A DNA stretch of 64,000 bases, from positions 154,089 to 218,088 of the IMG/VR virus record IMGVR_UViG_3300009430_000004. One strand, given 5' to 3'. The position numbers were made by a program, and so were the translations under genes. The notes under the pieces were generated by a model that was given only the letters and a program-made list of their open reading frames with translations, was not told the DNA's origin and did not search any database. This document shows, in pieces, positions 15,805-58,522 of the stretch. Position 1 is the first letter of the stretch, and every line of letters begins with the position of its first letter.

Positions 15805-15844
15805 TCCATTATTATAATATATATTTTCTGGATTTGAATATACG
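15805..15844 (-). promoter_or_regulatory. CGTA-N17-TATATATTAT promoter
   Basis: Plus-strand ATAATATATA 15814-23, TACG 15841-44. Confidence 0.65.
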
Positions 15845-15845
15845 A

Positions 15846-16274
15846 TTATAGTCCAGCCTCTCTATTATTGAGTTTTAGAGCATCATCCTCTAAAATAAGT
15901 ATTTCATTGATTACATCAAATATGTCCATTGTGAACAATTTTAATGTTTTCATAGTAAACTGAGACGCACTTGTCAGATTATTTATTCTAAGAATCATAG
16001 ACCATAACTCAGTTGTCCCATAAATTTCAAAACTTAATCTTTTTGGTTGAAATTTATATTTAGCGAACTCCTCTTCTGATAAAGTAACAGTTGATATTAT
16101 CTTTCTAAGATGGTCATGATATTTATCTAACAACGATGTATAATTAACGATTATTCTAGTATTGTTATTATCAATAAAAGAACTTTTTAAGTGTAGCTTA
16201 GCATGGGATATGTCTTGAGTTTTACCAAACTCAATGAGGTCTTGAATAGTATTACACTTTGTTATTGTTAACAT
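15846..16274 (-). CDS. Baseplate wedge/tail protein X-like (LysM-related) protein
   Basis: P.RLSFEIYGTTELWSMILRINN motif typical of gp53/tail-X-like proteins; AGGAGG RBS. Confidence 0.6.
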   Translation of the reverse strand: MLTITKCNTIQDLIEFGKTQDISHAKLHLKSSFIDNNNTRIIVNYTSLLDKYHDHLRKIISTVTLSEEEFAKYKFQPKRLSFEIYGTTELWSMILRINNLTSASQFTMKTLKLFTMDIFDVINEILILEDDALKLNNREAGL

Positions 16275-16285
16275 TTTTTCACCTC

Positions 16286-16663
16286 CTAAACGTTATCTGT
16301 AATATATACAGCCCTAATGTTTCTATCCATAAAACAACAAATAAATCTAGCACCTGAATGTATGATGCCGTTTATATCAGCTTTAAATTGTAAATCCGTA
16401 TTAGCAAACCTAGGTATGGTTATCCAGTTTTGTGTGGTAACTGAATTAGTTGGTGAAGGTTTGCACTCTTCGTCGTTCAAGAATATATTGCTATTGAACA
16501 CGACATTGTTAGTCGAGGGGTTACCCTTGCCTATTAATGGCATAATTTTTGGGACATTCATCTTAAATGAACCGCTACCGTGACTATGATTTCCAATCAA
16601 AAAACAATACTCCATTTGATTTATATCATATTCTTCCAGACAATCCATAATCATCTTAATCAC
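16286..16663 (-). CDS. Putative baseplate/virion protein
   Basis: 125 aa beta-rich, upstream TACA-N6-TA late-like motif, co-transcribed with tail-X-like gene. Confidence 0.45.
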   Translation of the reverse strand: MIKMIMDCLEEYDINQMEYCFLIGNHSHGSGSFKMNVPKIMPLIGKGNPSTNNVVFNSNIFLNDEECKPSPTNSVTTQNWITIPRFANTDLQFKADINGIIHSGARFICCFMDRNIRAVYITDNV

Positions 16664-16696
16664 CTCTTTCTAATATATTTCCTTATATTAATGTAG

Positions 16697-16730
16697 AAAA
16701 AAATAAGAAGAGGTGTAACCCTCTTCTTAA
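16697..16730 (-). terminator. Intrinsic terminator
   Basis: AAGAAGAGG / CCTCTTCTT. Confidence 0.7.
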
Positions 16731-17014
16731 CAAGCGACAACAAACCATAAAATCAATACGGGATGTATCATATAAGATCCATAAAACTCAATCCTAAATT
16801 CATGAGAATCAACACCAAATTTTTCCTCACAGAATAATTTGAATTTTTCAATATCTTCAGGTGTTACATCTTCATATTTTACGTCCATACCTGCTTCTTT
16901 TAAAGCCTCTGTAAATCTCTCATTAGGTGTCAACTCACGAAATGAAGGTTGGTCATACTTCGATTTGTATTCATCATCAAATTTGATAATAGCCTTTTTC
17001 TTTTCGGCTTCCAT
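16727..17014 (-). CDS. Hypothetical protein
   Basis: 95 aa, AGGAGG RBS. Confidence 0.6.
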   Translation of the reverse strand: MEAEKKKAIIKFDDEYKSKYDQPSFRELTPNERFTEALKEAGMDVKYEDVTPEDIEKFKLFCEEKFGVDSHEFRIEFYGSYMIHPVLILWFVVAC

Positions 17015-17025
17015 TGTTATCCCTC

Positions 17026-17631: not shown

Positions 17632-17744
17632 GTTTCCACATCTCCCTTTGTCATATTTTTTTAGTTTATTTGATTTTTACTATCTTTAATACATTTAAAT
17701 AATATACAAATAAATCGGCGTTTGTTGATTAGAGGTGATGAAGA

Positions 17745-18917
17745 ATGGGAATAGAATTAAATTCGCAACAAACCGATACAGTTGATAGATTAGTTAAATG
17801 GTGGCATAGTAGAGATAAACAAACCTTTGAGATATCAGGACCTGCTGGTTCTGGTAAGACTACATTGGTTTATTATCTAATTGAGCGAATAGGGATAGAC
17901 CCTAAAAAAGTATTATTTATGGCTTATGTTGGCAAGGCAACAATGGCACTTGCTAGAAAAGGAAATTTTGCTAAGACTATACATAGCACTATTTATAGAT
18001 TAGTTGAAGTTCCTAAACTAGATAATGAAGGAAATCCTATAAAGAAAAATAATAGGGTTGTAACAACAACTGTTTTTCAGAAGAAGGATAAGATAGATGA
18101 TGATATACAGGCGTTAGTTATTGATGAGGGTTCTATGGTAAATAAACAGATAGCTGAGGATATACTTAGCTTTAATTTGCCAATAATTGTACTAGGAGAC
18201 CTAAACCAGCTACCCCCTGTATTCGGAGACTCTTATTTCTTACAAAAACCTGATAGTGTACTTACTCAAGTTATGAGACAGATGGAAAATGACCCAATAG
18301 TACATTTAAGTCAGAGAGCTATAAGAGGAGAATATCTAAACATAGGTAAATATGGACCTATGTGTTTTGTTATTGATAAGGAAGTTATCAATGATAATTT
18401 ATTAATTAAGTCTGATATAGTTATCTGTGGAAAAAATAAAACAAGAGAAGATATCAATAACTATGTAAGACGACAAATTAAAGGAATTAAATCTGACATA
18501 CCAGTTATGGGAGAAAAACTTATATGTAGACAGAATAACTGGAACCTATCTGTTGGAGGGGATATATTCCTCATAAACGGTTTAATAGGTTATATGGAGG
18601 GTATCTATCTTGATACCTATAATAAGAAGTCTATTTGCATAGATTTCAGACCAGAGTTTATGGAAGATGACTACTTTGAGAAGATACCAATGGACTATGA
18701 ATACTTATTCCAGACTTATGAGGAAAAAAAACGAGGCAAGAGAAGTTACTATAATAAGTTTGAATTTGCATATGCCATTACTGCACACTTAGCACAAGGT
18801 TCGCAGTATGATAAAGTAATGATATATGACGAAAGAATAGGTGACAGAGATTACTATAGGAAATGGTTGTACACAGCCATAACTAGGGCTGTTAAAGGAT
18901 TAGTAGTAGCTGTATAA
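17745..18917 (+). CDS. SF1B helicase (RecD/Dda-like)
   Basis: GPAGSGKTT, IDEGSM, GDLNQLPPV, AYAITAHLAQGSQY, YTAITRA motifs. Confidence 0.9.
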   Translation: MGIELNSQQTDTVDRLVKWWHSRDKQTFEISGPAGSGKTTLVYYLIERIGIDPKKVLFMAYVGKATMALARKGNFAKTIHSTIYRLVEVPKLDNEGNPIKKNNRVVTTTVFQKKDKIDDDIQALVIDEGSMVNKQIAEDILSFNLPIIVLGDLNQLPPVFGDSYFLQKPDSVLTQVMRQMENDPIVHLSQRAIRGEYLNIGKYGPMCFVIDKEVINDNLLIKSDIVICGKNKTREDINNYVRRQIKGIKSDIPVMGEKLICRQNNWNLSVGGDIFLINGLIGYMEGIYLDTYNKKSICIDFRPEFMEDDYFEKIPMDYEYLFQTYEEKKRGKRSYYNKFEFAYAITAHLAQGSQYDKVMIYDERIGDRDYYRKWLYTAITRAVKGLVVAV

Positions 18918-19029
18918 AAAAAATAATATGCGGGAGGTCTATCTATCCAGATATAACCTCCCTCTTCCTTAGGGTAATTGATAATTAGACTATATTTTTT
19001 AGTGTCTCAATTATCATTTATGTGTATAC
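18916..19029 (-). ncRNA. Candidate early small RNA (~110 nt)
   Basis: CGTA-N17-TATATATTAT-N6-GTA promoter, 12-bp hairpin, terminator with T-tract only on this strand, no RBS-led ORF. Confidence 0.5.
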
Positions 19030-19066
19030 ACAATTATAATATATATCTGTGTTGGACTACTTTACG
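19027..19066 (-). promoter_or_regulatory. CGTA-N17-TATATATTAT-N6-GTA promoter
   Basis: ATAATATATA 19036-45, TACG 19063-66. Confidence 0.7.
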
Positions 19067-19098
19067 GTTTTCCTAAATACAGAAAAAATAATTTAGAT

Positions 19099-19133
19099 TA
19101 TATATTATATGTAGGTATCAGAACAAATTTATA
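19099..19133 (+). promoter_or_regulatory. Early (19099) and late (19122) promoters in tandem
   Basis: TATATATTAT ATGTAG GTA; AACA AATTTA TA. Confidence 0.65.
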
Positions 19134-19150
19134 AGAAGGGATGGGTTTAT

Positions 19151-19312: not shown

Positions 19313-19334
19313 ATATAAAAGGAGGGTGGGTTAA

Positions 19335-19661: not shown

Positions 19662-19685
19662 AATCTATATAAAGGAGGTGGGGTA

Positions 19686-20030: not shown

Positions 20031-20084
20031 AACAGTTAATTAAGAAATTTAACTGATATTTCAGTTATATATTATTATGCTGTA
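20031..20084 (+). promoter_or_regulatory. Late (20031) and early (20066) promoters
   Basis: AACA GTTAAT TA; TATATATTAT TATGCT GTA. Confidence 0.65.
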
Positions 20085-20108
20085 ATCAGTAAATAAATAA
20101 TCAAAAAA

Positions 20109-20804: not shown

Positions 20805-23231
20805 ATGGAAAAGTTTGTAGATGATGTTATAGAGCATAAAGAGGATGACATCGAGAAAATACAGACTAAACCCAATATGTATATCAGCTACTCAGGTAGA
20901 AGGGGTTCTAAACAGTTAGCTTATGAAAACATCAATAATGGTATTGATGAATGCATTAACCCTAATTCACCTGGAGATGAGATTGATATTGTAATTGATG
21001 AGACTGAAAACTCAATAAGTGTAACCGATAATGGTAGAGGAATTCAGTTTGAAAAGATGGAACTTGTCTGTACAAAGTTACAGGCTGGAAGTAAATTTAC
21101 TAGAGAGGGAAGCGGTGGTTCTGCTGGTGAAAACGGTGTAGGTATGACCGCTATGAATGCTCTCTCAGACTGGTTTGAAATCATTTCATATAGATATGGT
21201 GAAAGAGCCAAGGTAAGATTTGAGTTAGGAAAGCTAGTTCAACCTCTTACTGTAAAGAAAGTATCTGGGGATAAACATGGAACAACGGTCGCATTTAGAC
21301 CATCATCTATGTTCCTAGGAGAAGATTGTGCTATAGACTCTGATGAGTTATTGGCATGGACTGAAAAAATTATTTGTTTAGTACCACCTGAAATAAAGGT
21401 AAACTTTAATGTGATTAAGAAAGGAAAAGAATCAACAATCCAAAAGAAATTTAGAAATAAAAATGGTCTTTACGACTATTGCAAGAAGTTGGCTAAAAAG
21501 CCGCTTATAGACCCAATTCATTTTATGAGAACAATGAAAATGATGGAGAGAGTGAATACAATAACACCATCTAATTTAGATGATGCTATGAAATCACCAA
21601 ACTCGACATTTAAAGACGTAGAACGCTTTATTGGGCTAGAAGTGGCATTTACGTTCAATTCTGGTAGTGTAGACATGGTTGCTGATTCATTCTGTAATTT
21701 TATTAACACAGTAGAGAATGGTGTGCATGTAGATGCAGTTAAAACAGGTATATTACAATACCTAACTAAACAGACAAAAGATATGATGTCTGAGAAGGAA
21801 GCTAAGAATATTGATATAACCTTTGGTGATGCAGCTCAAGGTTTAGTATTAACAGTATACTTGAGCACTAATATGCAACCTCAGTTTGCATCTCAGACTA
21901 AAGAGAAGTTAACAAATAACGATTTCTTCAAACCTCTAAGAGATATGTCTTATAGAGCTTTGGATGAATATTTTAAGAAGAATACAAAAGAGCTGAAGAA
22001 GCTTACTGATATGATAAAGACTAATGCTAAGGCTAGAATAGAAGCCAACAAGGTTAGAAACTCAGTCATTAAAGGTGAGACAACTTCACTCGATGAGCAT
22101 AAATTAAAGAACTTTGCTCCTGCAAATAATAAGGGTAGAAATGAGTATAGAGAGTTATTCTTGATAGAAGGAGACTCAGCAATGGGCTCTGCTAGACAAG
22201 GAAGATTCGATAATGACACTCAAGCACTATTTGCCCTTAAGGGAGTCCCCCTAAACTCATTTAGCTTAAAGCTTGACAAAGTATTATTAAATGATGAGTT
22301 TAGAGGATTAACAAAAGTCTTAGGTTGTAACATAGGAGAAAGATTTGACATAACTAAGTTGAAGTATAAGAAGATTATCATCATGACTGACGCAGATATT
22401 GACGGTAATAGAATTACATCACTTATTTGTGCATTCTTCTTAGTGCATATGCCTGAGATAGTAAAACAAGGTTATCTGTATAAAGCAGTTACGCCTTTAT
22501 ATAAAATAAAGGATAATAAGAAACCTTTCATACTCAATAAACAAGAGTACATTGAAGTCTTTGAGGAAAGAGTTAGAAAGAACATCAGACTTATTAATCC
22601 TGAAACAAAGGTTGTATTCAAGGAAAAAGATATGAAGGAATTCTTGTTAAATAACAGAGAATACCTTGAAGAATTAGATAGAGTAGCAAATCATTTCGCA
22701 GTACATCCTATGATAGTTGAATTCTTAGCTATACATATGGATGATAGCGACTTCCTCAAAAAGCTTAGAAAGAAATTCCCTGAATTGAAAGTTGATGAAG
22801 ACAATGTATTGTCAGGTATATATGAAGGTAGATATCAGAATATAATACTTGATAAGATATTCAATAAAAGAGTCAACACTTTGAAGACTCTTATTAGAGA
22901 AGTCAATCAGAATAAAGCTTATTACATTCTTCATGAAGTTAGAGGTAAGGAGTTCGAAGATAGAGGGTTAATGTCAATCGGTGAGTTGTTAACATTATGT
23001 GAAAAGTTCCAACCTGAGATAGAAATGAGGTATAAGGGACTTGGTGAGTTAGACCCAGCTAAACTAAGAGAAACAACTCTTGACCCGAATAATAGAATAC
23101 TTATCAAACTTACTCTTGAAGACTTGGAAGCAGAGTTAACTAAGTTTAGAATATTACACGGAGATGACTCTGAAGAAAGAAAGAAGCTTATGGCACACTT
23201 CAAAATCAATAGGGAAGATCTTGATAACTAA
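20805..23231 (+). CDS. gyrB: Type IIA topoisomerase ATPase/TOPRIM subunit (GyrB/ParE)
   Basis: ENINNGIDE, DNGRGI, EGDSA, IMTDADIDG, RYKGLGE motifs. Confidence 0.93.
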   Translation: MEKFVDDVIEHKEDDIEKIQTKPNMYISYSGRRGSKQLAYENINNGIDECINPNSPGDEIDIVIDETENSISVTDNGRGIQFEKMELVCTKLQAGSKFTREGSGGSAGENGVGMTAMNALSDWFEIISYRYGERAKVRFELGKLVQPLTVKKVSGDKHGTTVAFRPSSMFLGEDCAIDSDELLAWTEKIICLVPPEIKVNFNVIKKGKESTIQKKFRNKNGLYDYCKKLAKKPLIDPIHFMRTMKMMERVNTITPSNLDDAMKSPNSTFKDVERFIGLEVAFTFNSGSVDMVADSFCNFINTVENGVHVDAVKTGILQYLTKQTKDMMSEKEAKNIDITFGDAAQGLVLTVYLSTNMQPQFASQTKEKLTNNDFFKPLRDMSYRALDEYFKKNTKELKKLTDMIKTNAKARIEANKVRNSVIKGETTSLDEHKLKNFAPANNKGRNEYRELFLIEGDSAMGSARQGRFDNDTQALFALKGVPLNSFSLKLDKVLLNDEFRGLTKVLGCNIGERFDITKLKYKKIIIMTDADIDGNRITSLICAFFLVHMPEIVKQGYLYKAVTPLYKIKDNKKPFILNKQEYIEVFEERVRKNIRLINPETKVVFKEKDMKEFLLNNREYLEELDRVANHFAVHPMIVEFLAIHMDDSDFLKKLRKKFPELKVDEDNVLSGIYEGRYQNIILDKIFNKRVNTLKTLIREVNQNKAYYILHEVRGKEFEDRGLMSIGELLTLCEKFQPEIEMRYKGLGELDPAKLRETTLDPNNRILIKLTLEDLEAELTKFRILHGDDSEERKKLMAHFKINREDLDN

Positions 23232-23263: not shown

Positions 23264-23273
23264 TATATATTAT
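23264..23273 (+). promoter_or_regulatory. Early motif (topoisomerase A)
   Basis: TATATATTAT. Confidence 0.6.
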
Positions 23274-29431: not shown

Positions 29432-29595
29432 AAAAAAAAGCGGGGTCAGAGATAAAAGCATAAAGCCTGGCGTATAGCCCCCCATTGACCCCCCCATCAT
29501 GTGGGAAATTAAACCATGTAAACCATGGATGATGGCTGTTTAAATAGTCACCACATTATCATTTCCCAAGGAATTGACATATTATATATACACAC
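29432..29595 (-). ncRNA. Candidate early structured RNA (~160 nt)
   Basis: CGTA-class promoter, multiple stems, GGGGUCA/UGACCCC terminal stem plus U8. Confidence 0.55.
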
Positions 29596-29632
29596 ATGAT
29601 AATAATATATATTTTATTAGTGTGACTTTACG
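29593..29632 (-). promoter_or_regulatory. CGTA-N17-TATATATTAT-N6-GTG promoter
   Basis: ATAATATATA 29602-11, TACG 29629-32. Confidence 0.7.
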
Positions 29633-30212: not shown

Positions 30213-30250
30213 AGATTTTATACCTCCTAATTATATTAGTATCTATATTA

Positions 30251-30281
30251 ATAATATATACTTAGCGTGTCGTAAAATACG
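30251..30281 (-). promoter_or_regulatory. CGTA-N17-TATATATTAT promoter (DUF4116 gene)
   Basis: ATAATATATA 30251-60, TACG 30278-81. Confidence 0.7.
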
Positions 30282-30488: not shown

Positions 30489-30498
30489 ATAATATATA
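30489..30498 (-). promoter_or_regulatory. Early motif
   Basis: TATATATTAT CACA GTA. Confidence 0.55.
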
Positions 30499-32094: not shown

Positions 32095-32137
32095 AAAAAA
32101 TAAGGTATGGAGAAATCCATACCTTATTTTTATTTTT
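32092..32137. terminator. AATAAGG-family bidirectional terminator
   Basis: AAAATAAGGTATGGA / TCCATACCTTATTTT. Confidence 0.8.
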
Positions 32138-33064: not shown

Positions 33065-33150
33065 GATTTAATTCCTCCCACAGAATCAAAATATTTTTCA
33101 CTAGCATCTATATTTACTAGCGGAACATACAAATATATTATCTACGTATG

Positions 33151-33190
33151 TACACAATAATAATATATATTCATCATGTTTTAATTTACG
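33151..33190 (-). promoter_or_regulatory. CGTA-N17-TATATATTAT-N6-GTA promoter
   Basis: ATAATATATA 33160-69, TACG 33187-90. Confidence 0.7.
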
Positions 33191-33635: not shown

Positions 33636-33654
33636 TATATATTATCTTTCTGTA
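33636..33654 (+). promoter_or_regulatory. Early promoter (tubulin)
   Basis: TATATATTAT CTTTCT GTA. Confidence 0.65.
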
Positions 33655-33695
33655 ATCAAACATAAATAATCTAAATATAAAGGAGATGTATATCA

Positions 33696-38145: not shown

Positions 38146-38155
38146 TATATATTAT
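38146..38155 (+). promoter_or_regulatory. Early motif (nvRNAP beta-C)
   Basis: TATATATTAT. Confidence 0.6.
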
Positions 38156-38183
38156 TAGTATGGTAGAGACAGAATAATATATA

Positions 38184-40556: not shown

Positions 40557-40587
40557 CGTATTTACTCGATTATCAAATATATATTAT
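40557..40587 (+). promoter_or_regulatory. CGTA-N17-TATATATTAT promoter
   Basis: CGTA 40557-60, TATATATTAT 40578-87. Confidence 0.7.
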
Positions 40588-40636
40588 TATTGTAGATATA
40601 CATAAGATATGGGATTATGTGTATTGAATATATTCT

Positions 40637-41229: not shown

Positions 41230-42360
41230 ATGAATAAGAAAGTAAACCAAATCAGACCAACAAGAGTTATAGAGGTAGTTGAGCTAATCGAGAAAATCCG
41301 TGCAGAACATCCAACAGCAACATTGAGAAATGTATTCCAGTTGCTTAAATCAGGTAAGGCATATTCCAGATTGAATGATTATGAAAAGAAGAAAATTTGG
41401 GACGAGCCAGATATCACCGCTGCCTTACAAGTGTTTGTCAATAACTCCAATGAAGATGATAAACAACTTTTTGAAAAATCTTCAGATATGAATGAAACTG
41501 TTGACAGGATCATTGGAGACATAATGGCTGGTAAGACTTATAATTCTTCTGAAGGAGATAACGAAGAGTTGGAAACTGACAAAAATAAAGGAGAAGACGA
41601 AAACATGGAAAATTATATTAAGAAAACTGGCGAAGACACAACTCCAAAAAATATTGAAGAATACTTTAAAAGTGAAAGTGGGGAAGAAGCTATGAAAACC
41701 GAGCAAACTGGAACTAAAGGTGAAGAAAATAAATCTGAAAAGACATCACCTAAGAAATATAACGGCAAAGCCTTCATATTCAAATATAAGAAAGCAGTTG
41801 ACCTAAATGAGACTATAGAAGTCTCAATCGGAGACAAAGATGGGAACAAAGAAAGCAACAAAGATGAAAATTGGAAAACAATTGAAGGTGTTGAATACGA
41901 AACTAAAGACGGGGCTGAAGCTGGTGAAAAGAAATCTGGGATAGTAGTTGAGTTTGTTAAGAAACTTAAGATGCTACAAGAAAAGGAATCAGAATCTTTT
42001 ACAAAGCTTGTTAATATAATCAAAGAAAAGAAGAGCCTTGATCTGGATGATCTTATAGAAGAAATGGATATGAGATTATTCGGTTTGATTGGTGTAATCA
42101 TGGCGTTTGCTAGTAAGTCCAATGTTGAAAAGCATCAAATAGCACAGTACATAGTATGTACTGCTGAAGGGCTATATGATTATGCAGTTTATGAATCTGA
42201 TGTTACAGGTACTGATATAGTAGTTTCGGGTAATGTTATTCCTTTCAAGAAGAAGGAAGAAATAGTTACTAAAAAGACGGAAGACTATAGCCATATACAT
42301 TTTCCAAGTGTAAAAACTAAACTTGAAGGGATGGCTAAGAGAAGAGCATTATTCGGTTAA
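41230..42360 (+). CDS. Hypothetical protein with acidic low-complexity centre
   Basis: 376 aa, GAAAGGGTGGG RBS. Confidence 0.65.
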   Translation: MNKKVNQIRPTRVIEVVELIEKIRAEHPTATLRNVFQLLKSGKAYSRLNDYEKKKIWDEPDITAALQVFVNNSNEDDKQLFEKSSDMNETVDRIIGDIMAGKTYNSSEGDNEELETDKNKGEDENMENYIKKTGEDTTPKNIEEYFKSESGEEAMKTEQTGTKGEENKSEKTSPKKYNGKAFIFKYKKAVDLNETIEVSIGDKDGNKESNKDENWKTIEGVEYETKDGAEAGEKKSGIVVEFVKKLKMLQEKESESFTKLVNIIKEKKSLDLDDLIEEMDMRLFGLIGVIMAFASKSNVEKHQIAQYIVCTAEGLYDYAVYESDVTGTDIVVSGNVIPFKKKEEIVTKKTEDYSHIHFPSVKTKLEGMAKRRALFG

Positions 42361-42367: not shown

Positions 42368-42406
42368 AATAAAAATAAGGGCAAATCTTCATGCCCTTAT
42401 TTTTTT
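42368..42406 (+). terminator. AATAAGG-family terminator
   Basis: AAAAATAAGGGCA / TGCCCTTATTTTT. Confidence 0.75.
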
Positions 42407-42426: not shown

Positions 42427-42448
42427 TATATATTATAACAAAGTAATA
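42427..42448 (+). promoter_or_regulatory. Overlapping early and late promoters
   Basis: TATATATTAT AACAAA GTA and AACA AAGTAA TA. Confidence 0.65.
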
Positions 42449-43113: not shown

Positions 43114-43142
43114 ATCAGGAAGGGTCAATCCCTTCCTGATTT
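43113..43142 (+). terminator. Intrinsic terminator
   Basis: AATCAGGAAGGG / CCCTTCCTGATT. Confidence 0.7.
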
Positions 43143-43172
43143 ATATATTATTCTCTTGTAAACATAACAATG
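43142..43172 (+). promoter_or_regulatory. Early and late promoters (ligase)
   Basis: TATATATTAT TCTCTT GTA; AACA TAACAA TG. Confidence 0.65.
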
Positions 43173-43184: not shown

Positions 43185-45269
43185 ATGATGGATAAAGACA
43201 TGCTAATTGGAGCATTGTCCACGATATATCTAACTATTGAAGAGAAAGATGATTATGCTAAAGCAATAGAAATGTTAAATGCCATGAAAATAAATAGTTT
43301 AGTTAATTATTATATTAACGTGGCTGAAGAGTATGATGAACAAGATTCTGTTATCATACAACAAATCATATGGATACTCCAAGCAATATATAATAATAGT
43401 GGGGAGATATCTCCTGTGACGGATGAAGATTATGATAAGATATATGAAATAAATAGGACATTTACTGGTGAAGAAATAGTAGGTTCCTTTAATGCTTCAG
43501 ATAGAAATATATCTAATCATAAGTATCCTGATTTAAGAGGAACCTTAGATAAGGTTCATTTTATTACCCTCGAAGATAAGGGTAAAGATAAAAGAAAGTC
43601 AATCCCAGAATGGAGAAAAGCAGTAGAAAATAAACTGGGGCGACCTTTAACCGATGATGAATGTCAAATGTATGCATTTCCTAAATTTGATGGTTTATCT
43701 GAAATATTTGAGTGTGATAATACTGGATTAGTCGAGAAAGTATTGTCGAGGGGAGATACAGATAAGAACGAAGCTGTTGATACCACTAAATTATTTAAGG
43801 GAACTAAATTCAGTATGATTGAAGGATGGAATTCACCTTATGGAATAAAGACAGAGGTTGTAATGTCAGAAGATAATTATAATGAACTCTGTTCTAAGGA
43901 AGGTGACTTTAAGAGTCCAAGAAGTGCAGTATCGTCCATATTGAATTCAAAGGAACTTGATAGGAAGTATCTAAAATATCTGACTGTAGTTCCATTACAG
44001 ATTCAGAATTATGATACTAAGCAAATAATAGTGGCACCATCAATGTTTCAACAATATCCATGGAGTCTAATAAATCTTAATGATGAAGACCATATGAGAG
44101 AAACCTTTAATGGTATAAAGAAAAAGATGGAAACAGAATATGGTGTACCTATAGACGGTATAGTTTTAAGATTTAAGAATACAAATCTTCATACTGTGTT
44201 AGGACGAGATGGTGCAATTAATAAATATGAGGTTGCATTTAAGTTTCCACCAGAGCAGAAGAAAACCATATTAAAGGATATAGACTTCTCAGTAGGTATC
44301 CTTGGAGGGGTTACCCCTGTTGCTAAAATAGAACCTGTTAAAATTAAAGGTAATACAATCAAAAGTATTAGCTTAGGTTCTATTGATAGATTTGAAAGCT
44401 TTGAATTCAGAGTTGGAGATGAGGTAATTGTAAAATATGATATTATACCTTATCTGACAAAAGATGAAACATGTAAACCTGGGATTGGAAAGAAATTTGA
44501 AACTCCTAAAGAATGTCCATTTTGTCATGAGGAGTTAAAGAAAGACCCTGTGTTAAAATGTGTTAATCTAAATTGTGAATCTAGAGCTATAGGTAAGATT
44601 CTTAATTATGTAGAAAAGATGAGAATCGCTAATATATCTATTGGTATAATAACAACCCTATTCAAGGCAGGTTATTTAAAGTCTATCGAAGACTTATATA
44701 AACTGGAAAAACATAAGAGGTCTATTGTTATGATGGACGGATTCGGTGAAACATCTTTCAATAAGATTATTGCAGGTGTAGATTCGAGAAGAGATGTATA
44801 TGACTATGAATTTATGGGGTCATTAGGTATCCCAGATATCGGTCGCAAAATGTTTAAAAAGATTTCAAATATATATTATCTAGATGAGTTAATACAGATA
44901 TGTATTAATGACAAGGCTGAAAAGCTTACTGCGATAGGAGGTATAAAGAAGAAGACAGCTAATAAAATTATAGAAGGTGTAAACCTTAATAAAGATTTAA
45001 TTACATTTCTACGTTCCGAGTTAAAAATTAGGAGGGATGAACGAAGATATACAATCAAAGTGTACTTCACAAAAGTGAGGGATAAAGAATTTGCAAAGTA
45101 TCTTGAAAGTAAAGATGTCTTAATAATGGAAAGCTATAACAATGAAGTTGATTTGTTAATCATTCCAGACAGAAATACTGAATCAAGTAAAATAACTAAG
45201 GCTCAAAAAGCTAATAAGGAAATCGTCACAATTGACGAGGCTTATAAGATGTTCGGTTATAACCAGTAA
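43185..45269 (+). CDS. ligA: NAD-dependent DNA ligase
   Basis: KFDG adenylation motif, DGIV, AFKFP, OB fold, CPFC..C...C Zn finger, BRCT tail. Confidence 0.92.
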   Translation: MMDKDMLIGALSTIYLTIEEKDDYAKAIEMLNAMKINSLVNYYINVAEEYDEQDSVIIQQIIWILQAIYNNSGEISPVTDEDYDKIYEINRTFTGEEIVGSFNASDRNISNHKYPDLRGTLDKVHFITLEDKGKDKRKSIPEWRKAVENKLGRPLTDDECQMYAFPKFDGLSEIFECDNTGLVEKVLSRGDTDKNEAVDTTKLFKGTKFSMIEGWNSPYGIKTEVVMSEDNYNELCSKEGDFKSPRSAVSSILNSKELDRKYLKYLTVVPLQIQNYDTKQIIVAPSMFQQYPWSLINLNDEDHMRETFNGIKKKMETEYGVPIDGIVLRFKNTNLHTVLGRDGAINKYEVAFKFPPEQKKTILKDIDFSVGILGGVTPVAKIEPVKIKGNTIKSISLGSIDRFESFEFRVGDEVIVKYDIIPYLTKDETCKPGIGKKFETPKECPFCHEELKKDPVLKCVNLNCESRAIGKILNYVEKMRIANISIGIITTLFKAGYLKSIEDLYKLEKHKRSIVMMDGFGETSFNKIIAGVDSRRDVYDYEFMGSLGIPDIGRKMFKKISNIYYLDELIQICINDKAEKLTAIGGIKKKTANKIIEGVNLNKDLITFLRSELKIRRDERRYTIKVYFTKVRDKEFAKYLESKDVLIMESYNNEVDLLIIPDRNTESSKITKAQKANKEIVTIDEAYKMFGYNQ

Positions 45270-51655: not shown

Positions 51656-51674
51656 TATATATTATATATTGGTA
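51656..51674 (+). promoter_or_regulatory. Early promoter
   Basis: TATATATTAT ATATTG GTA. Confidence 0.65.
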
Positions 51675-52769: not shown

Positions 52770-53108
52770 ATGGAAAATCAAATTAAACAACAAGACGACA
52801 CAATACATGCAAATTTGTCTGAAAATGCATCAATTACCTTTCACATGGGGAACCCACATGTGGTCATGACTATATCTGCTGAGGGAATAATTTCCTTTCC
52901 AGATTCAATCAAGGAAGCTAATGCAGATGAGATTGCAAAGCAGGTTATAACCTTATTAGAGGATAATACTGCAACTAAAGTCGCTAATCTAAAGCAAATA
53001 CTTAGAAGTGTGGATGGAAGAAAATTTGCTGATTATGGGACAATGAATTTTGTGAAAGCTGTGTTATTTGACAAAATTTATAATTTATATATTGGGGATG
53101 GTAAGTAA
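52770..53108 (+). CDS. Hypothetical protein
   Basis: Start moved to ATG 52770 after AAGGGGGG. Confidence 0.55.
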   Translation: MENQIKQQDDTIHANLSENASITFHMGNPHVVMTISAEGIISFPDSIKEANADEIAKQVITLLEDNTATKVANLKQILRSVDGRKFADYGTMNFVKAVLFDKIYNLYIGDGK

Positions 53109-53109
53109 T

Positions 53110-53913
53110 ATGGAGCGTTTAACATTTTTCGGAACAGGGTGTTTTAATAATACCAAACTTGGAAATAACAGTGGTTTCTTTATGGTAGAAGATAATTTAT
53201 TTATCATTGACTGCGGAGAGACAGTTTTTCATAGTATACTAAAATCAGGCGTTCTTAAATATGCCAAGGACATTACGGTTATGGTAACACATGGACATGG
53301 AGACCATGTAGGTAGCTTCACATCATTTGCTTTCCATGTGTTCTATTTCATGAATAAAAAGGTTACATTGGTTACAAATAATCAGGACGATATTGTTGGG
53401 GTGTTTAACAGACAGATGGGTAACATAACAAAGTATGTTAAGCTAAAGAGTACCAACAAAGATGGCTCAGTTTCTTTTAATATTGGATGTACTGATGTGA
53501 ATATACAGTATGTAAAAGTTGACCATGTTGACTACTTAAAGAGTTATGGACTAATAGTAAATATTAATAATCCTTTATCAGGAAAGGATAGTTTCTATTA
53601 TAGTGGTGATAGTAGCGATATTAAGCCATTTATATTAAGAAAGTTTGAAAGGGGAGAAATAGAATATATTTATCAAGACGTTACATTTAAGGAATATGAA
53701 AATCAACCTCATATGTCAGTATATAAGTTGATGGAAAAAATTCCTGCTGAAAAGAGAGATAAAGTATTCTGTATGCATTTAGATCCTGATTTTGATATTC
53801 AGATTGCAATGAATCTTGGATTCTCTATACCTCCCCGTACTACAGAAGGAGGCGTTATAAGATGTCAAAGTATATCAGGACAGATTTTAGAAACCATCCT
53901 ATACTATTCGTAG
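53110..53913 (+). CDS. MBL-fold phosphodiesterase (Apyc1/RNase Z-like)
   Basis: GTG, NNS, IDCG, THGHGDH, HV..SY, YSGD, QD, H, MH metal-ligand series. Confidence 0.8.
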   Translation: MERLTFFGTGCFNNTKLGNNSGFFMVEDNLFIIDCGETVFHSILKSGVLKYAKDITVMVTHGHGDHVGSFTSFAFHVFYFMNKKVTLVTNNQDDIVGVFNRQMGNITKYVKLKSTNKDGSVSFNIGCTDVNIQYVKVDHVDYLKSYGLIVNINNPLSGKDSFYYSGDSSDIKPFILRKFERGEIEYIYQDVTFKEYENQPHMSVYKLMEKIPAEKRDKVFCMHLDPDFDIQIAMNLGFSIPPRTTEGGVIRCQSISGQILETILYYS

Positions 53914-54727: not shown

Positions 54728-54740
54728 CGAGTGTTTTTTA

Positions 54741-54778: not shown

Positions 54779-54803
54779 ATATTTTTTTAGGAGGTATTTT
54801 ATA

Positions 54804-55130: not shown

Positions 55131-55160
55131 TACTATCAATCCGAGGATTGGGGTGAAAAG

Positions 55161-57830
55161 ATGAAGATAAAATATTTGTTATTAAAGAATTTTGCTAGTA
55201 TTTATACAGCAATGAAGAAAAAGGTAGTAGAAATAGACTTTAAAAAGTCTAAGAACAGAGTAATCCTATTAGTAGGAGATAATGGTACTGGTAAAACATC
55301 TTTATTGAGTGCTCTTCACCCATTTGCTTATCCAGGGAATATGGATGTGCGAGATACTGGAGAATTGATTTTAGATGAGGTTGATGGGTATAAAGAGGTA
55401 CATCTTGAAGATGACGGTACACTATATGTAATAAAACATCATTACTTATATACTAAGAATGGTAGAAATGTTAAAAGTTATATATCAAAAGATGGCACAG
55501 AAATGAATCCTAATGGAAATGTGACATCATTTAAAGAAATAATTTTATCAGAACTATCTCTGGAAATTGATTTCCTCAAGTTAATTAGGCTTGGTTCTAA
55601 TGTTACTAACTTTATAGATATGAAAGCATCTGAGCGTAAGAGTTTTACTTCAGAATTATTATCTGAGGTTGATGTGTATAGTAAGCTATATAAGAAGATT
55701 AATGAGGACAGTAGAGTTTTAAAGACTATGATGAAATCAGTAACTGATAAGCTAGAGAAGTTAAAAATCCTTGATGAAAAGGATGTCATAATAGTAATAG
55801 AATTATTAGAAGATAAGTTGACTTCGTTGAAAGAAGAGAAAGATTCGTACAATAGTCAAATTTGGTCTATAAATGGTTCTATTGGTACATTAATACCTGA
55901 AGGGGTTGAATCTTTCCTATATTCAATCAGGACAGATGAAGAATCATACAATGACATGGTTAGGGAGATAAAGACAAAGCAGAATAAGATAGATAAGATA
56001 CCAATGATTATAATGGGAAGTATTGAGGAATCTATATCCTCCGTAATGACTGAAATAACTAATAATGAAAATAAGATAGCTATGAACACAAATATGATAA
56101 ACTTCTACTTCACACAGTTGAATAATCTATATACTCAGAAGGAAGAGAGAGAAAATAATCTGAAGTATATAACTTCAGATTTAGAGTATACTAAGTTAAA
56201 CGACCTATATCTCGGTTTACATCGTGAGAAAGAGAAGTTGGATAAGCACTATAAAAATTATGAGCCTAAGTGTAGCAAAGATGATATGTTGTCGGCACTT
56301 AGACTTATGCAGGAAATAGAGCAGTTTGTGTCAAACATTCATACATTTAATCATAATGCTGTAACTAATGTTGTTAATCATATGCTGAATGATGAGGATG
56401 TAAATGATAATGTTCGACGTGAGATATCTAGTATTGATGATAAGATTCAGAAGAATAACTTCGAACTAATGAAGTTAAATAACATAGTTGGCAAGAAAGA
56501 CGGAGTATATGTACTATTCAAACCAACAGACTGTAAGTCCAGTAATTGCCCATATGTTAAGTTCTATGATGACCATGTTGATGCTAAGAAAGATTCTCCT
56601 GTTGAGAAACTTACTGCTGAAATAAAGAAACTTGAGAATAAACGAGAATTCTTTGAGTCTATGTATGATATTAATAAAAATATAGACTATATACTTCTCT
56701 TAATAAAATCAAATAATAAATTAATTGAGAAGTTACCTGAAGATTTCTTCAGTATAAAAAGAATTCTTAATTCAATTAAAGATTGTATACCCTTCTTTGA
56801 TGAAGATAATATCACTAATTATATAGCGGTGCTTGAGGAGTATGAGCATTATTTATCTATCAAGGAAAAGATAAAGGACATTAAGAAGGAATTATCTTTC
56901 ATTGAGAAGAATGCCACATCTCTTGCTACAATGCAGAAAGAGCTAGATGTGTTAGATAATGATATTTATAAACTTAATAATGACATTAACTCATTAAAGA
57001 AGGTCAACGAAATGTTAAGTGTGAGAAACGATAAATTATCAGACTTGAGAGAAGTTTATGAAGATTATAAAGATGGTCTTGATGAAATAAAGGACTTGAG
57101 TGATAAGGCTTCTAAGCTATTTGACAGTTTGGTAGAGCGTAGAAAGATACAGAAAAAGATAGATGAGTATATTGTCATCAAAAAGGATTATGAACGTAAA
57201 ATCTCAGTATTGGACGTTCAAATAAAGCAAGTTGACGAAGAGATAACAAACAATAAATTCAAATTAAGAGAGTTTGAGGCTCTTAAAGAAGAAAAAGCTA
57301 TCATCGAAGAACAATTCGATGATATAGACACTATAAAAGAAGCATTGTCATCTAATAAGGGAATGCCACTACTATTCATTCAGCTATACTTAAGGAAAAC
57401 TAAAGCTATTGTTAATGAGTTATTGAGTGAGTTATTCGGTGGTGAACTGGAAATAGATGATTTTGACATAAATGATAGAGAATTTAAAATACCTTATATC
57501 AAGAATGGTATTAGAGTTTCAGATATCATATCTTGTTCACAAGGTGAGAGAAGCTTTATATCTTTGGCAATATCATTTGCTCTAGTAAAGCAATCAATAG
57601 AGCGATATAATATCATGCTCTTAGATGAGATTGACTCAACTCTCGATATGACTAATAGACCAATATTCATAAAGATATTGGAAGAACAGTTAAAAGCAAT
57701 AGGCTCTGAACAGGTATTCTTGATAACACATAACAACATGTTTGATAATTACCCTGTTGACTTAATTATGACATCAGACATTGAAATAGATAATTACAAG
57801 AATACTAATGTTATCTTCAGGGCAGCATAA
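55161..57830 (+). CDS. sbcC: SbcC/Rad50-like SMC ATPase
   Basis: GDNGTGKTS, long coiled coil with central C-x4-C, CSQGE signature, LLDEID, ITH. Confidence 0.9.
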   Translation: MKIKYLLLKNFASIYTAMKKKVVEIDFKKSKNRVILLVGDNGTGKTSLLSALHPFAYPGNMDVRDTGELILDEVDGYKEVHLEDDGTLYVIKHHYLYTKNGRNVKSYISKDGTEMNPNGNVTSFKEIILSELSLEIDFLKLIRLGSNVTNFIDMKASERKSFTSELLSEVDVYSKLYKKINEDSRVLKTMMKSVTDKLEKLKILDEKDVIIVIELLEDKLTSLKEEKDSYNSQIWSINGSIGTLIPEGVESFLYSIRTDEESYNDMVREIKTKQNKIDKIPMIIMGSIEESISSVMTEITNNENKIAMNTNMINFYFTQLNNLYTQKEERENNLKYITSDLEYTKLNDLYLGLHREKEKLDKHYKNYEPKCSKDDMLSALRLMQEIEQFVSNIHTFNHNAVTNVVNHMLNDEDVNDNVRREISSIDDKIQKNNFELMKLNNIVGKKDGVYVLFKPTDCKSSNCPYVKFYDDHVDAKKDSPVEKLTAEIKKLENKREFFESMYDINKNIDYILLLIKSNNKLIEKLPEDFFSIKRILNSIKDCIPFFDEDNITNYIAVLEEYEHYLSIKEKIKDIKKELSFIEKNATSLATMQKELDVLDNDIYKLNNDINSLKKVNEMLSVRNDKLSDLREVYEDYKDGLDEIKDLSDKASKLFDSLVERRKIQKKIDEYIVIKKDYERKISVLDVQIKQVDEEITNNKFKLREFEALKEEKAIIEEQFDDIDTIKEALSSNKGMPLLFIQLYLRKTKAIVNELLSELFGGELEIDDFDINDREFKIPYIKNGIRVSDIISCSQGERSFISLAISFALVKQSIERYNIMLLDEIDSTLDMTNRPIFIKILEEQLKAIGSEQVFLITHNNMFDNYPVDLIMTSDIEIDNYKNTNVIFRAA

Positions 57831-57861
57831 AGATAGTTAAGTATTTCTTAACTATCTTTTT
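57829..57861 (+). terminator. Intrinsic terminator
   Basis: AAAGATAGTTAAG / CTTAACTATCTTT. Confidence 0.7.
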
Positions 57862-57864
57862 GAA

Positions 57865-57883
57865 TATATATTATTATGCTGTA
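57865..57883 (+). promoter_or_regulatory. Early promoter
   Basis: TATATATTATTATGCTGTA, identical 19-mer at 20066. Confidence 0.65.
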
Positions 57884-57908
57884 GATTAATTACAATATTT
57901 ATTTAAGT

Positions 57909-58454
57909 TTGGGAGGGTTCAAAATGTTAAAAGAAAAAATGACAATGGAAGATTTAATGGCTAGGCTAAAGAAGATGGGACTTTATGCGTATAGTCACAG
58001 GGGAGAACAAAATGTTGTAACAATTGTCTATGGATACACTAATCCTGACTATGAAATAGGACAGGATACACACAATGTTTGCGGTGAAACACCATTTGAA
58101 ATCTTTGAAAAGATTACAGCATGGATTAATGACAAGAAGTTCTGGTTAGAACAAGATAAATATCTAGTTCTAGATTATGCAGAAAACCCATATAATATTG
58201 ACCTTAGTTACGAGCTTTTGAAAATGGGTTTCAAGTGTGCTGACATTGAATTAGAAGAAACTAACTTTGTAGCAGTTGATTGTAGATTCTGCTATATAAA
58301 TGAAAATAAAATATTCTGCTATGACGGAATCCTGAGATTTGATAATGTTGGTAATAAGTTCTCAACTATGGAGTACATTAAAGTATGGGTTGAGAAATTC
58401 AGCATATTCTTCCCAGGGAAGGAATTTGTACCTTGTAAAAACAAAGACATATAA
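57909..58454 (+). CDS. Hypothetical protein
   Basis: True start probably ATG 57924; early motif upstream. Confidence 0.6.
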   Translation: MGGFKMLKEKMTMEDLMARLKKMGLYAYSHRGEQNVVTIVYGYTNPDYEIGQDTHNVCGETPFEIFEKITAWINDKKFWLEQDKYLVLDYAENPYNIDLSYELLKMGFKCADIELEETNFVAVDCRFCYINENKIFCYDGILRFDNVGNKFSTMEYIKVWVEKFSIFFPGKEFVPCKNKDI

Positions 58455-58490
58455 AAATAGAGCTAGGAGAAATCCTAGCTCTATTTTTTT
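58453..58490 (+). terminator. Intrinsic terminator
   Basis: AAAATAGAGCTAGGA / TCCTAGCTCTATTTT. Confidence 0.75.
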
Positions 58491-58491
58491 A

Positions 58492-58522
58492 CGTAAAATC
58501 AAGACCAATAATTATATATTAT
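58492..58522 (+). promoter_or_regulatory. CGTA-N17-TATATATTAT promoter
   Basis: CGTA 58492-95, TATATATTAT 58513-22. Confidence 0.7.

What the first reader, a model, noticed from the sequence alone, without database searches (positions are those of the whole stretch)
15805..58522. Bipartite phage promoter class CGTA-N17-TATATATTAT marks accessory genes and ORF-less RNAs
Seen: 19 exact TATATATTAT 10-mers at transcription-unit starts (plus: 11269, 19099, 20066, 23264, 33636, 38146, 40578, 42427, 43142, 51656, 57865, 58513, 60047; minus: 15814, 19036, 29602, 30251, 30489, 33160). About half have GTR exactly 6 nt downstream. Seven (15814, 19036, 29602, 30251, 33160, 40578, 58513) carry CGTA exactly 17 nt upstream, checked base by base. 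These seven drive only small accessory genes (DUF4116, membrane protein, hypotheticals) or RNAs without an ORF. Replication and RNAP genes have the 10-mer without CGTA. Known: phiKZ-group early promoters are described as single AT-rich TATATT-type motifs read by the virion RNAP. Inference: a -35-like second element defines an immediate-early subclass, implying a sigma4-like reader or activator that I do not know to be described for these phages.
Basis: partly seen in the sequence, partly recalled or inferred. Interest (0 to 1): 0.85.

Follow-up and report, generated by a model that had tools for sequence, protein, structure and literature searches.

The report
Two-part early promoters of a jumbo phage
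About a quarter of the early promoters of this AR9-like giant phage carry a second short signal (CGTA) exactly 17 bases upstream of the known promoter core. In the studied relative AR9 the same two-part promoters drive the genes whose transcripts peak first after infection.

Summary
TATATATTAT occurs 21 times in the window (about 1.4 expected), and seven copies have CGTA exactly 17 nt upstream. That is the strongest hit in an unbiased scan of all tetramers at all offsets (Bonferroni about 1e-11).

The 10-mer is not new. It is the published early promoter of Bacillus phage AR9 (AAATATATATTAT-N6-G+1), read by the injected virion RNA polymerase. The window is an uncultivated AR9-like jumbo phage of 218 kb.

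I did not find the upstream element described in the papers I could search. With the AR9 start-site rule it lies at -37 to -34.

- In 167 kb of this phage, 10 of 42 cores carry it, all at 17 nt.
- In AR9, 10 of about 41 mapped early promoters carry CCGTAT(T/C)AAA at exactly 18 nt.
- Yersinia phage phiR1-37 has at least three copies at 17 nt.

All eight genes that the AR9 authors called "pre-early" lie in units headed by such promoters. The 5-min/20-min transcript ratio is 1.16 for this class against 0.21 for the rest (p = 3e-5).

My best reading is a -35-like element, read by the injected transcription machinery, that defines an immediate-early regulon. The protein that reads it is unknown, and nothing was measured in this phage.

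The parts
15807..15844 (-). CGTA-class early promoter. CGTA 15841-15844, core 15814-15823, predicted start G at 15807. Drives a 98-aa ORFan (15702-15406) and ends at a terminator near 15379.
19029..19066 (-). CGTA-class early promoter. CGTA 19063-19066, core 19036-19045, predicted start G at 19029. Placed back to back with the non-CGTA promoter 19099+.
18918..19029 (-). Predicted ORF-less RNA of about 105-112 nt from promoter 19036-. It has two hairpins; the second (18935-18965) is followed by AUUAUUUUUUUU. If that does not terminate, the transcript runs antisense to the helicase gene 17745-18917.
   Evidence: MFE -27 kcal/mol, z = -3.6; no Rfam or tRNA hit
29595..29632 (-). CGTA-class early promoter. 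CGTA 29629-29632, core 29602-29611, predicted start G at 29595. The terminator T-run of the upstream unit ends 6 nt before CGTA.
29432..29595 (-). Predicted ORF-less RNA of about 156-164 nt from promoter 29602-, ending at a hairpin plus T8. Its only ORF (32 aa) has no Shine-Dalgarno sequence.
   Evidence: fold not better than shuffles, z = -0.8
30244..30281 (-). CGTA-class early promoter. CGTA 30278-30281 directly abuts the T7 of the upstream terminator; predicted start A at 30244. Drives the 179-aa DUF4116 protein (30212-29673).
33153..33190 (-). CGTA-class early promoter. CGTA 33187-33190, predicted start G at 33153. Drives ORFans of 195 aa (33064-32477) and 109 aa (32466-32137); terminator near 32100. 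A paralogous cassette lies elsewhere in the genome (L331:3147+).
40557..40594 (+). CGTA-class early promoter just after the RNAP-beta gene. CGTA 40557-40560, core 40578-40587, predicted start A at 40594. Drives a 190-aa protein with two TM-like segments (40637-41209) and a 376-aa ORFan (41230-42360); terminator near 42400.
   Evidence: At the same place, relative L218 has CGTT at 17 nt and L219 has CGTA at 16 nt.
58492..58529 (+). CGTA-class early promoter. CGTA 58492-58495 lies 1 nt after a terminator T-run; core 58513-58522; predicted start G at 58529. Drives a 78-aa ORFan (58542-58778); terminator near 58801.
11269..11278 (+). Early promoter core without CGTA. Heads the unit with a Cas4/PD-(D/E)XK nuclease, a 401-aa protein and the DnaB-like helicase.
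19099..19108 (+). Early promoter core without CGTA, divergent from 19036-.
20066..20075 (+). Early promoter core without CGTA. The unit contains gyrB (20805-23231).
23264..23273 (+). Early promoter core without CGTA, before gyrA (23300-25705). A terminator T-run ends 4 nt upstream of the core.
30489..30498 (-). Early promoter core without CGTA. Drives a small ORF and is followed by the terminator that abuts the CGTA of 30251-.
33636..33645 (+). Early promoter core without CGTA, before a tubulin/FtsZ-family gene (33696-34826).
38146..38155 (+). Early promoter core without CGTA, before the RNAP-beta-like gene (38184-40496). It forms an 11-nt inverted repeat with 38173-38183, which explains the 'minus-strand' hit at 38174.
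42427..42436 (+). Early promoter core with CGTA at the wrong spacing (7 nt), counted as non-CGTA. It precedes an Rv2179c-like exoribonuclease gene.
43142..43151 (+). Early promoter core without CGTA, before the NAD-dependent ligase gene (43185-45269).
44870..44879 (+). Core 10-mer inside the ligase ORF. It is conserved in relatives, but it encodes N-I-Y-Y with the commonest AT-rich codons. Whether it is a promoter is doubtful.
51656..51665 (+). Early promoter core without CGTA. Heads a long unit that reaches SbcC (55161-57830).
57865..57874 (+). Early promoter core without CGTA.
60047..60056 (+). Early promoter core without CGTA, before the family-B DNA polymerase gene (60136-61950).

Best explanation
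The window belongs to an AR9-like jumbo phage. Its early genes are transcribed from the AR9-type core TATATATTAT (-16 to -7; start at a G or A 6 nt downstream) by the RNA polymerase injected with the DNA.

About a quarter of these promoters carry a second recognition element, YCGTAWWWT (AR9: ACCGTATTAAA). It sits at a fixed distance, with CGTA at -37 to -34 here and -38 to -35 in AR9.

I propose that this is a positively acting, -35-like upstream element. It would be contacted by the injected transcription machinery, meaning the virion RNA polymerase or a protein that travels with it. It would make these promoters fire first, so they define an immediate-early ('pre-early') regulon. That regulon consists of short, terminator-insulated units encoding small ORFan or membrane proteins and possibly small RNAs.

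Shown: the element, its exact spacing, its conservation in three phages, and its link to pre-early kinetics in AR9.

Inferred: that it acts positively, that the injected machinery reads it, and that start sites and kinetics in this phage follow AR9.
For: 1. Identity of the core. The AR9 early consensus is AAATATATATTAT-N6-G+1, with start sites mapped by dRNA-seq and primer extension. Early transcription does not need protein synthesis (PMC5312081). The window's RNAP-beta-like ORF is 37% identical to the AR9/PBS1 non-virion RNAP beta subunit.

2. Statistics.
- CGTA at 17 nt is the top signal among all tetramers and offsets in the window (Bonferroni 1e-11).
- CGTA at 18 nt is the top signal in AR9 (Bonferroni 8e-12).
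- In 166.8 kb of this phage, 10 of 42 cores have it, all at 17 nt and none at 16 or 18.
- None of 120 one-mismatch cores has it.

3. Only CGTA and an A/T-rich tail are conserved. The 17-nt spacers are unrelated, so this is selection and not simple copying.

4. AR9. Ten mapped early promoters have CCGTAT(T/C)AAA at 18 nt: P047, P048, P069, P108, P120, P169, P190, P234, P253 and P292. P292 was confirmed on the contiguous PBS1 sequence.

5. Kinetics in AR9.
- All eight 'pre-early' genes (g048, g109, g111, g120, g169, g235, g289, g292) lie in units headed by these promoters. The hypergeometric probability is 8e-5.
- The median 5'/20' FPKM ratio of the first gene is 1.16 against 0.21 (p = 3e-5).
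- Leaving out genes with a mapped late promoter, it is 1.16 against 0.22 (p = 6e-5).
- FPKM at 5 min is higher for the class (304 against 85, p = 0.025).

6. A positive rather than negative role. Three AR9 promoters with the element work despite a deviant core (AAACATATATTAT, AAGCATATATTAT, AAGTATATATTAT). AACTATATATTAT without the element is silent. The 5'-end step heights at 20 min are not lower for this class. The element is asymmetric and its spacing is exact.

7. Footprint-like argument. Upstream terminators abut the core (3-5 nt away in three of four cases) in promoters without CGTA, but abut CGTA in promoters with it. None of 35 promoter-less terminators has CGTA.

8. phiR1-37. CGTA lies 17 nt from the core position upstream of g078, g251 and g252. 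All three promoters were verified by RNA-seq and all three genes are classed EARLY.
Against: No transcript, start site or timing has been measured for this phage; everything functional is transferred from AR9 and phiR1-37.

The AR9 link is a correlation drawn from three time points and one data set, and mRNA stability could contribute. Stronger promoters alone do not explain why these transcripts stop rising after 5 min while the others rise about 5-fold.

No reading protein was identified. The spacing is not rigid everywhere: uncultivated relatives show 16, 17, 18 and occasionally 19 or 22 nt. The closest relative (L218) has CGTT at the orthologous site.

It therefore shows only that other examples exist.
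Confidence: 0.55

Rival explanations
1. CGTA is an operator for a phage-made repressor. The repressor shuts off a subset of early promoters a few minutes after infection, which gives the transient 'pre-early' pattern.
For: AR9 transcripts of this class peak at 5 min and then stay flat or fall, while other early transcripts keep rising. The three phiR1-37 genes decline.
Against: The element is asymmetric, with no dyad, and lies 17-18 nt away from the core rather than over it. The spacing is exact within each genome, which fits a contact with the polymerase better than occlusion. AR9 5'-end step heights at 20 min are not lower for this class (516 against 295). FPKM at 5 min is higher, not equal. 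The element accompanies deviant cores that still work.
Confidence: 0.2
2. CGTA is the box of a separate activator made early in infection, working like the MotA box of T4 middle promoters.
For: It is a short asymmetric box at a fixed distance from a -10-like core, found only at a subset of promoters.
Against: In AR9 this class is the earliest, not a delayed one. An activator that must first be synthesised would delay these promoters relative to core-only promoters.
Confidence: 0.1
3. CGTA belongs to something else that happens to lie next to these promoters: the end of the upstream terminator, a divergent late promoter, or a remnant of a duplicated cassette.
For: Four of the promoters in this phage follow a terminator T-run directly. 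Two cassettes are clearly paralogous (window 33160- and L331:3147+). In AR9 some divergent late promoters overlap the reverse complement TACGG.
Against: None of 35 terminators without a promoter is followed by CGTA. The AR9 copies are not preceded by T-runs. The spacers are unrelated in sequence, yet CGTA is invariant at one offset in three distant phages. The distance to AR9 late promoters varies.
Confidence: 0.05

Closest known systems
AR9 / PBS1 early (virion RNA polymerase) promoter, AAATATATATTAT-N6-G+1 (Lavysh et al. 2017, PMC5312081)
   Same: The 10-mer core is identical, with an A-rich triplet before it and a G or A 6 nt after it. It sits in front of early-type genes, and the phage encodes AR9-like split multisubunit RNA polymerases.
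   Different: The published description is a single element centred near -10. The paper does not contain the strings CGTA or CCGTA, and later reviews describe only a ~10-nt AT-rich motif. The upstream element and the promoter subclass it marks are what is added here. The spacing is 17 nt in this phage and 18 nt in AR9.
Bacterial sigma-70 promoters (-35 TTGACA, 17+/-1 bp spacer, -10 TATAAT)
   Same: Two elements on one DNA strand with a spacer that tolerates about +/-1 bp. The upstream one is centred near -35 and the downstream one is an AT-rich -10-like sequence.
   Different: The sequence is CGTA, not TTGACA. The distance from CGTA to the TATTAT hexamer is 21 nt, not 17. AR9-group phages have no sigma homologue in their polymerases, and their transcription does not depend on host RNA polymerase (literature).
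T4 middle promoters (MotA box at -30 plus a sigma-70 -10 element; sigma appropriation by AsiA/MotA)
   Same: A short asymmetric box replaces a -35 element at a fixed distance from a -10 element and marks one temporal class of phage promoters.
   Different: The T4 class is delayed, needs early phage proteins, and uses host RNA polymerase. Here the class is the earliest, and the polymerase is the phage's own injected enzyme.
phiKZ / 201phi2-1 early promoters
   Same: They are read by an injected multisubunit virion RNA polymerase. Conservation is reported to extend to the -20 and -30 regions (PMC11512511).
   Different: Those motifs are continuous AT-rich stretches shared by all early promoters. 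They are not a discrete G+C-containing tetramer present in only a quarter of them.

Membership tests
AR9-type virion-RNAP early promoter | Core TATATATTAT preceded by an A-rich triplet | tested here: met
   There are 21 exact cores in the window (1.4 expected). The consensus of the three preceding bases is AAa.
AR9-type virion-RNAP early promoter | Transcription starts at a purine (G) 6 nt downstream of the core | not testable with these tools
   The sequence is compatible: G at 16 and A at 4 of 21 sites. No RNA data exist for this phage.
AR9-type virion-RNAP early promoter | The phage encodes AR9-like split multisubunit RNA polymerases | tested here: met
   ORF 38184-40496 has the Rpb2 domain 6 and is 37% identical to the AR9 non-virion RNAP beta subunit. 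An Rpb1-domain ORF lies in L324. Gene order matches AR9.
AR9-type virion-RNAP early promoter | Activity without new protein synthesis and without host RNA polymerase | not testable with these tools
   Shown for AR9 promoters P087 and P104 only, and neither carries CGTA.
Proposed CGTA subclass (pre-early promoters) | YCGTAWW at a fixed 17 nt (AR9: 18 nt) upstream of the core | tested here: met
   7 of 21 in the window and 10 of 42 in 167 kb of the genome, all at 17 nt. AR9 has 10 at 18 nt.
Proposed CGTA subclass (pre-early promoters) | Transcripts already maximal at the first time point | not testable with these tools
   Met in AR9 and consistent in phiR1-37. Not measurable for this uncultivated phage.
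Sigma-70-type bipartite promoter | A -35 hexamer resembling TTGACA, 17+/-1 bp from a TATAAT-like hexamer | tested here: not met
   The hexamers 17 bp upstream of TATTAT read TAWWWT (for example TAAAGT, TATTTT) and show no TTGACA.
T4 MotA-type middle promoter | Delayed class that depends on an early phage activator | tested here: not met
   In AR9 this class is the earliest, with a 5'/20' ratio of 1.16 against 0.21.

The most novel reading that the evidence does not exclude
The sigma-less virion RNA polymerase of AR9-group jumbo phages has a second DNA-reading module that works like a -35 reader. It could be a subunit, a domain or a co-injected protein. Its reach is set per lineage at 16, 17 or 18 nt. 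It defines a conserved immediate-early regulon of host-takeover ORFans, membrane proteins and small RNAs in phages of both Firmicutes and Proteobacteria.
Probability: 0.4. Interest if true: 0.75.

Novelty: new variant of a known kind. Interest (0 to 1): 0.62.

Why it matters
How the injected multisubunit RNA polymerases of jumbo phages find their promoters without a sigma factor is still open; a 2026 review still lists it as unknown.

A discrete upstream element with exact spacing, present in only some promoters, gives that question a concrete test. Mutate four bases or shift the spacer in AR9/PBS1, or use the element as bait for the protein that reads it.

It also offers a sequence explanation for the 'pre-early' genes that the AR9 authors noticed but could not explain. 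It lets immediate-early genes, the likely host-takeover and anti-defence functions, be predicted from sequence alone in uncultivated AR9-like phages.

Tried and rejected
- **Near matches in GenBank phages.** None found, so AR9, PBS1 and phiR1-37 served as references.
- **Spacing histogram over all IMG/VR contigs**. A TACG control gave a similar though flatter profile (17 and 18 nt: 29 of 90, against 48 of 103 for CGTA). Control loci rich in the 10-mer had no CGTA at 15-19 nt but are mostly unrelated AT-rich viruses. I use these scans only to show that other jumbo-phage contigs have such promoters (L194, L267, L293, L130, L311, L137).
- **Cores with one or two mismatches plus CGTA.** None at one mismatch, and one probably chance hit at two mismatches.
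- **CGTA as part of terminators.** Rejected.
- **CGTA as part of AR9-type late promoters (AACA-N6-TA/G).** There is no fixed relation. AACA strings occur in two spacers of this phage, at different registers.
- **A sigma-region-4-like reader.** AR9 gp148 scores 16.7 bits against a 25.7-bit cut-off, and tblastn finds no homologue in this phage.
- **Known RNAs.** No tRNA and no Rfam family in the window.
- **Function of the downstream proteins.** Pfam and PHROGs give only DUF4116 and PHROG families of unknown function.
- **Full phiR1-37 genome and expression table.** Not completed. Only the first 50 kb and one 6-kb piece were analysed, so the three phiR1-37 cases are examples and not a genome-wide test.
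- **Remaining quarter of this phage's genome.** The last 24% (about 51 kb) was not fetched.
Full report
**1. The observation**

TATATATTAT occurs 21 times in the 64-kb window, against 1.4 expected from shuffles. CGTA-N17-TATATATTAT occurs at exactly the seven listed places, with none expected.

I then scanned every tetramer at every offset from -70 to -1 relative to the core. CGTA with a 17-nt gap is the top signal (7 of 21, p = 5.7e-16, Bonferroni 1e-11). The next signals are overlapping tetramers: TCGT and GTAA. No core with one mismatch carries it.

Ten of 21 sites have GTR starting 6 nt after the core. The base at that position is G in 16, A in 4 and T in 1.

Nineteen sites face a gene start. 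44870+ lies inside the ligase ORF. 38174- is the other arm of an inverted repeat at the RNAP-beta promoter.

**2. What the phage is**

There is no close DNA match among GenBank phages. The RNAP-beta-like ORF 38184-40496 is 37% identical to the non-virion RNAP beta subunit of Bacillus phages AR9 and PBS1. The next hits are Listeria, Staphylococcus and Yersinia (phiR1-37) jumbo phages.

The window encodes the following:
- gyrB and gyrA
- a DnaB-like and a Dda-like helicase
- an NAD-dependent ligase
- SbcC
- a family-B DNA polymerase
- tail-fibre-like giants on the opposite strand

The gene order recalls AR9.

The window is the last 64 kb of IMG/VR contig 3300009430_000004 (218,088 bp). The same genome is ENA contig k141_816018 (218,197 bp).

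**3. The core is already known**

Lavysh et al. 2017 (PMC5312081) mapped 41 AR9 early promoters with the consensus AAATATATATTAT-(6N)-G+1. These are read by the injected virion RNA polymerase, independently of protein synthesis.

With that rule the core spans -16 to -7, and CGTA lies at -37 to -34.

**4. The upstream element across this phage**

I walked the genome with exact-protein look-ups and reached 166.8 kb, or 76% of it. That stretch holds 42 exact cores.

- CGTA occurs within 60 nt upstream at a gap of 17 nt ten times.
- It occurs once at 7 nt and once at 25 nt, the latter on a promoter that also has the 17-nt copy.
- It never occurs at 16 or 18 nt.
- None of the 120 one-mismatch cores has it at 15-19 nt.

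The consensus is aaaa(C/T)CGTA(A/T)(A/T)(A/T)T, then an unconserved spacer, then AAaTATATATTAT. The spacers are unrelated in sequence, so CGTA is kept by selection and not by copying. Two cassettes (window 33160- and L331:3147+) are nevertheless paralogous.

**5. It belongs to the promoter, not to terminators**

I found 43 hairpin-plus-T-run sites in 131 kb.

| Terminator group | Number | Position of next element after the T-run |
|---|---|---|
| Followed by CGTA within 12 nt | 4 | CGTA 0-6 nt after the T-run; all four have the core at 17 nt |
| Followed by a core without CGTA | 4 | core 3-5 nt after the T-run in three cases, 20 nt in one |
| Not followed by a promoter | 35 | no CGTA |

So the packed genome leaves about 20 nt upstream of the start for ordinary early promoters, but about 38 nt for the CGTA class. 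This resembles a footprint.

**6. The units it heads**

With AR9-type start sites, the CGTA promoters head short units of 156-1806 nt, each ended by a strong terminator. Their products are as follows:
- ORFans of 78, 83, 98, 124, 195+109 and 223 aa
- a DUF4116 protein
- a 190-aa protein with two TM-like segments, followed by a 376-aa ORFan
- two units with no credible ORF

The 19029-to-18918 RNA folds well (z = -3.6). Its terminator is atypical, however, and read-through would run antisense to a helicase gene. The 29595-to-29432 RNA ends at a clear terminator but folds no better than shuffled sequence. Neither matches Rfam. Both remain predictions.

Five of the six real minus-strand promoters in the window are of the CGTA class, against two of thirteen on the plus strand. 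In the closest relative (L218, RNAP-beta 60% identical) the minus-strand cassettes are absent. The class therefore sits largely in variable, accessory islands.

**7. The same element in AR9**

I fetched the whole AR9 genome. Ten mapped early promoters carry (A)CCGTAT(T/C)AAA, with CGTA exactly 18 nt from the core: P047, P048, P069, P108, P120, P169, P190, P234, P253 and P292.

P292 runs off the end of the linear record. The contiguous PBS1 sequence confirms it.

CGTA at 18 nt is the top signal of the unbiased scan in AR9 as well (Bonferroni 8e-12).

The AR9 paper contains neither 'CGTA' nor 'CCGTA'. The 2020 and 2026 reviews describe only a ~10-nt AT-rich motif near -10 and no sigma-like reader. 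The only held paper that mentions the 13-mer in a phage context is the AR9 paper.

**8. Kinetics in AR9**

The authors singled out g048, g109, g111, g120, g169, g235, g289 and g292 as most abundant at 5 min. They called them a possible 'pre-early' group and offered no sequence explanation.

All eight lie in units headed by CGTA promoters (P048, P108, P120, P169, P234, P292). Six units all falling among 10 of 38 promoters has probability 8e-5.

I compared the first gene after each promoter using their Tables S2-S4:

| Measure | CGTA class | Other early promoters | p |
|---|---|---|---|
| Median 5'/20' FPKM ratio | 1.16 (n = 10) | 0.21 (n = 28) | 3e-5 |
| Same, leaving out genes with a mapped late promoter | 1.16 (n = 10) | 0.22 (n = 24) | 6e-5 |
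| Median FPKM at 5 min | 304 | 85 | 0.025 |
| dRNA-seq 5'-end step height at 20 min | 516 | 295 | not significant |

Because the step height at 20 min is not lower, these promoters are not switched off by then.

Three CGTA promoters work with deviant cores (AAACATATATTAT, AAGCATATATTAT, AAGTATATATTAT). AACTATATATTAT without the element is silent.

**9. phiR1-37 and uncultivated relatives**

The phiR1-37 core is NATATATTAT-N6-G. CGTA lies 17 nt from the core position upstream of g078, g251 and g252. All three promoters are RNA-seq-verified, and all three genes are classed EARLY. Neighbouring core-only promoters drive g077 ('NO' change) and g073 (LATE). This is three cases, not a genome-wide test.

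IMG/VR contigs of jumbo size show YCCGTAWWW at 16, 17 or 18 nt, and occasionally at 19 or 22 nt. I therefore use them only to show that such promoters exist elsewhere.

**10. Mechanism**

The evidence consists of:
- exact spacing within each genome
- an asymmetric element
- a position like that of a -35 element
- the footprint-like packing against terminators
- rescue of weak cores
- higher early abundance without later shut-off

I therefore favour a positively acting upstream element contacted by the injected polymerase or a protein injected with it (confidence 0.55).

A repressor operator would fit the transient pattern but not the other features (0.2). An activator made early is disfavoured by the timing (0.1). 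Terminator, late-promoter or duplication artefacts are unlikely (0.05).

The reader protein is unknown. The only sigma-like lead, AR9 gp148, scores below threshold and has no homologue in this phage.

**11. Verdict**

The core is known. The CGTA subclass is a new variant of that known promoter type. It is conserved across phages of Bacillus, of Yersinia and of an unknown host, which is probably a Firmicute judging by its Amidase_3/SH3/PG-binding lysins. It is linked to the earliest expression class by existing data. Nothing was measured in this phage itself.

Noticed in passing
window 33696-34826 (+): The first gene after promoter 33636+ encodes a tubulin/FtsZ-family GTPase (Pfam Tubulin, 2.7e-20). 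That is a PhuZ/TubZ-like protein in an AR9-like phage, a group not known to form a phage nucleus.
   Followed up: no
window 38146-38183: The promoter core of the RNAP-beta gene and its reverse complement form an 11-nt inverted repeat (TATATATTATT ... AATAATATATA) spanning the start site. In relatives (L219:9942, L256:9863) the same promoter sits inside a longer palindrome (GAGAATGTGTAT...ATACATTCTC). This may be an operator for autoregulation.
   Followed up: partly
window 44870-44879 (+), inside ligase ORF 43185-45269: This exact core, with AAA before it and G 6 nt after it, is conserved in four relatives (L218:15422, L219:17643, L256:2639, L290:2310). It encodes N-I-Y-Y with the commonest codons, so protein conservation plus codon bias may explain it. 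An internal promoter is not excluded.
   Followed up: partly
window 20082-20102 and 33652-33672: The 5' leaders from promoters 20066+ and 33636+ share GTAATCA-N3-4-ATAAATAATC right at the predicted start, and 57865+ begins similarly. The AR9 paper also mentions an unexplained motif in early 5' UTRs.
   Followed up: no
window 33120-33153, 40594-40627; L331:3163 onward: Several CGTA-class transcripts begin with (G/A)TA(C/T)ATAC-like sequences that can pair with a GTATGT a few bases downstream, giving a hairpin at the 5' end. The string TGTATGTTCC(TAG) recurs next to three promoters (33160-, L331:3147+, L329:1477+).
   Followed up: no
L326:10001-11357 (same genome, outside the window): Thymidylate synthase family, DHFR, thymidylate kinase and dCMP deaminase genes are present. 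This phage probably has thymine (or a thymine-derived base) in its DNA, unlike the uracil DNA of AR9, PBS1 and phiR1-37. The early promoter core is nevertheless identical.
   Followed up: no
window 53068-53913 (+); L329:5712-5966; L330:5339-5818; L323:21862 onward / L324:7861-10020: Candidate counter-defence and signalling genes: an Apyc1-like metallo-beta-lactamase-fold protein (anti-Pycsar family), a weak Acb2/Tad1-hairpin hit, a GGDEF-domain protein and a full-length polyphosphate kinase 1.
   Followed up: no
window 17699-17708 (-): TGTATATTAT, a one-mismatch core with G 6 nt downstream, sits in the divergent gap before the minus-strand genes 17631-16727. It may be a working variant early promoter, since AR9 tolerates some core changes.
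   Followed up: no
AR9 NC_031039.1 about 116,650-116,700 (L222): Opposite the g142 late promoter the plus strand reads CCGTATCAAAAAG-N-TATGTATTAT, that is CGTA, 17 nt, then a one-mismatch core. No early start site is mapped there, so it looks like a decayed or silent copy of a CGTA promoter.
   Followed up: no
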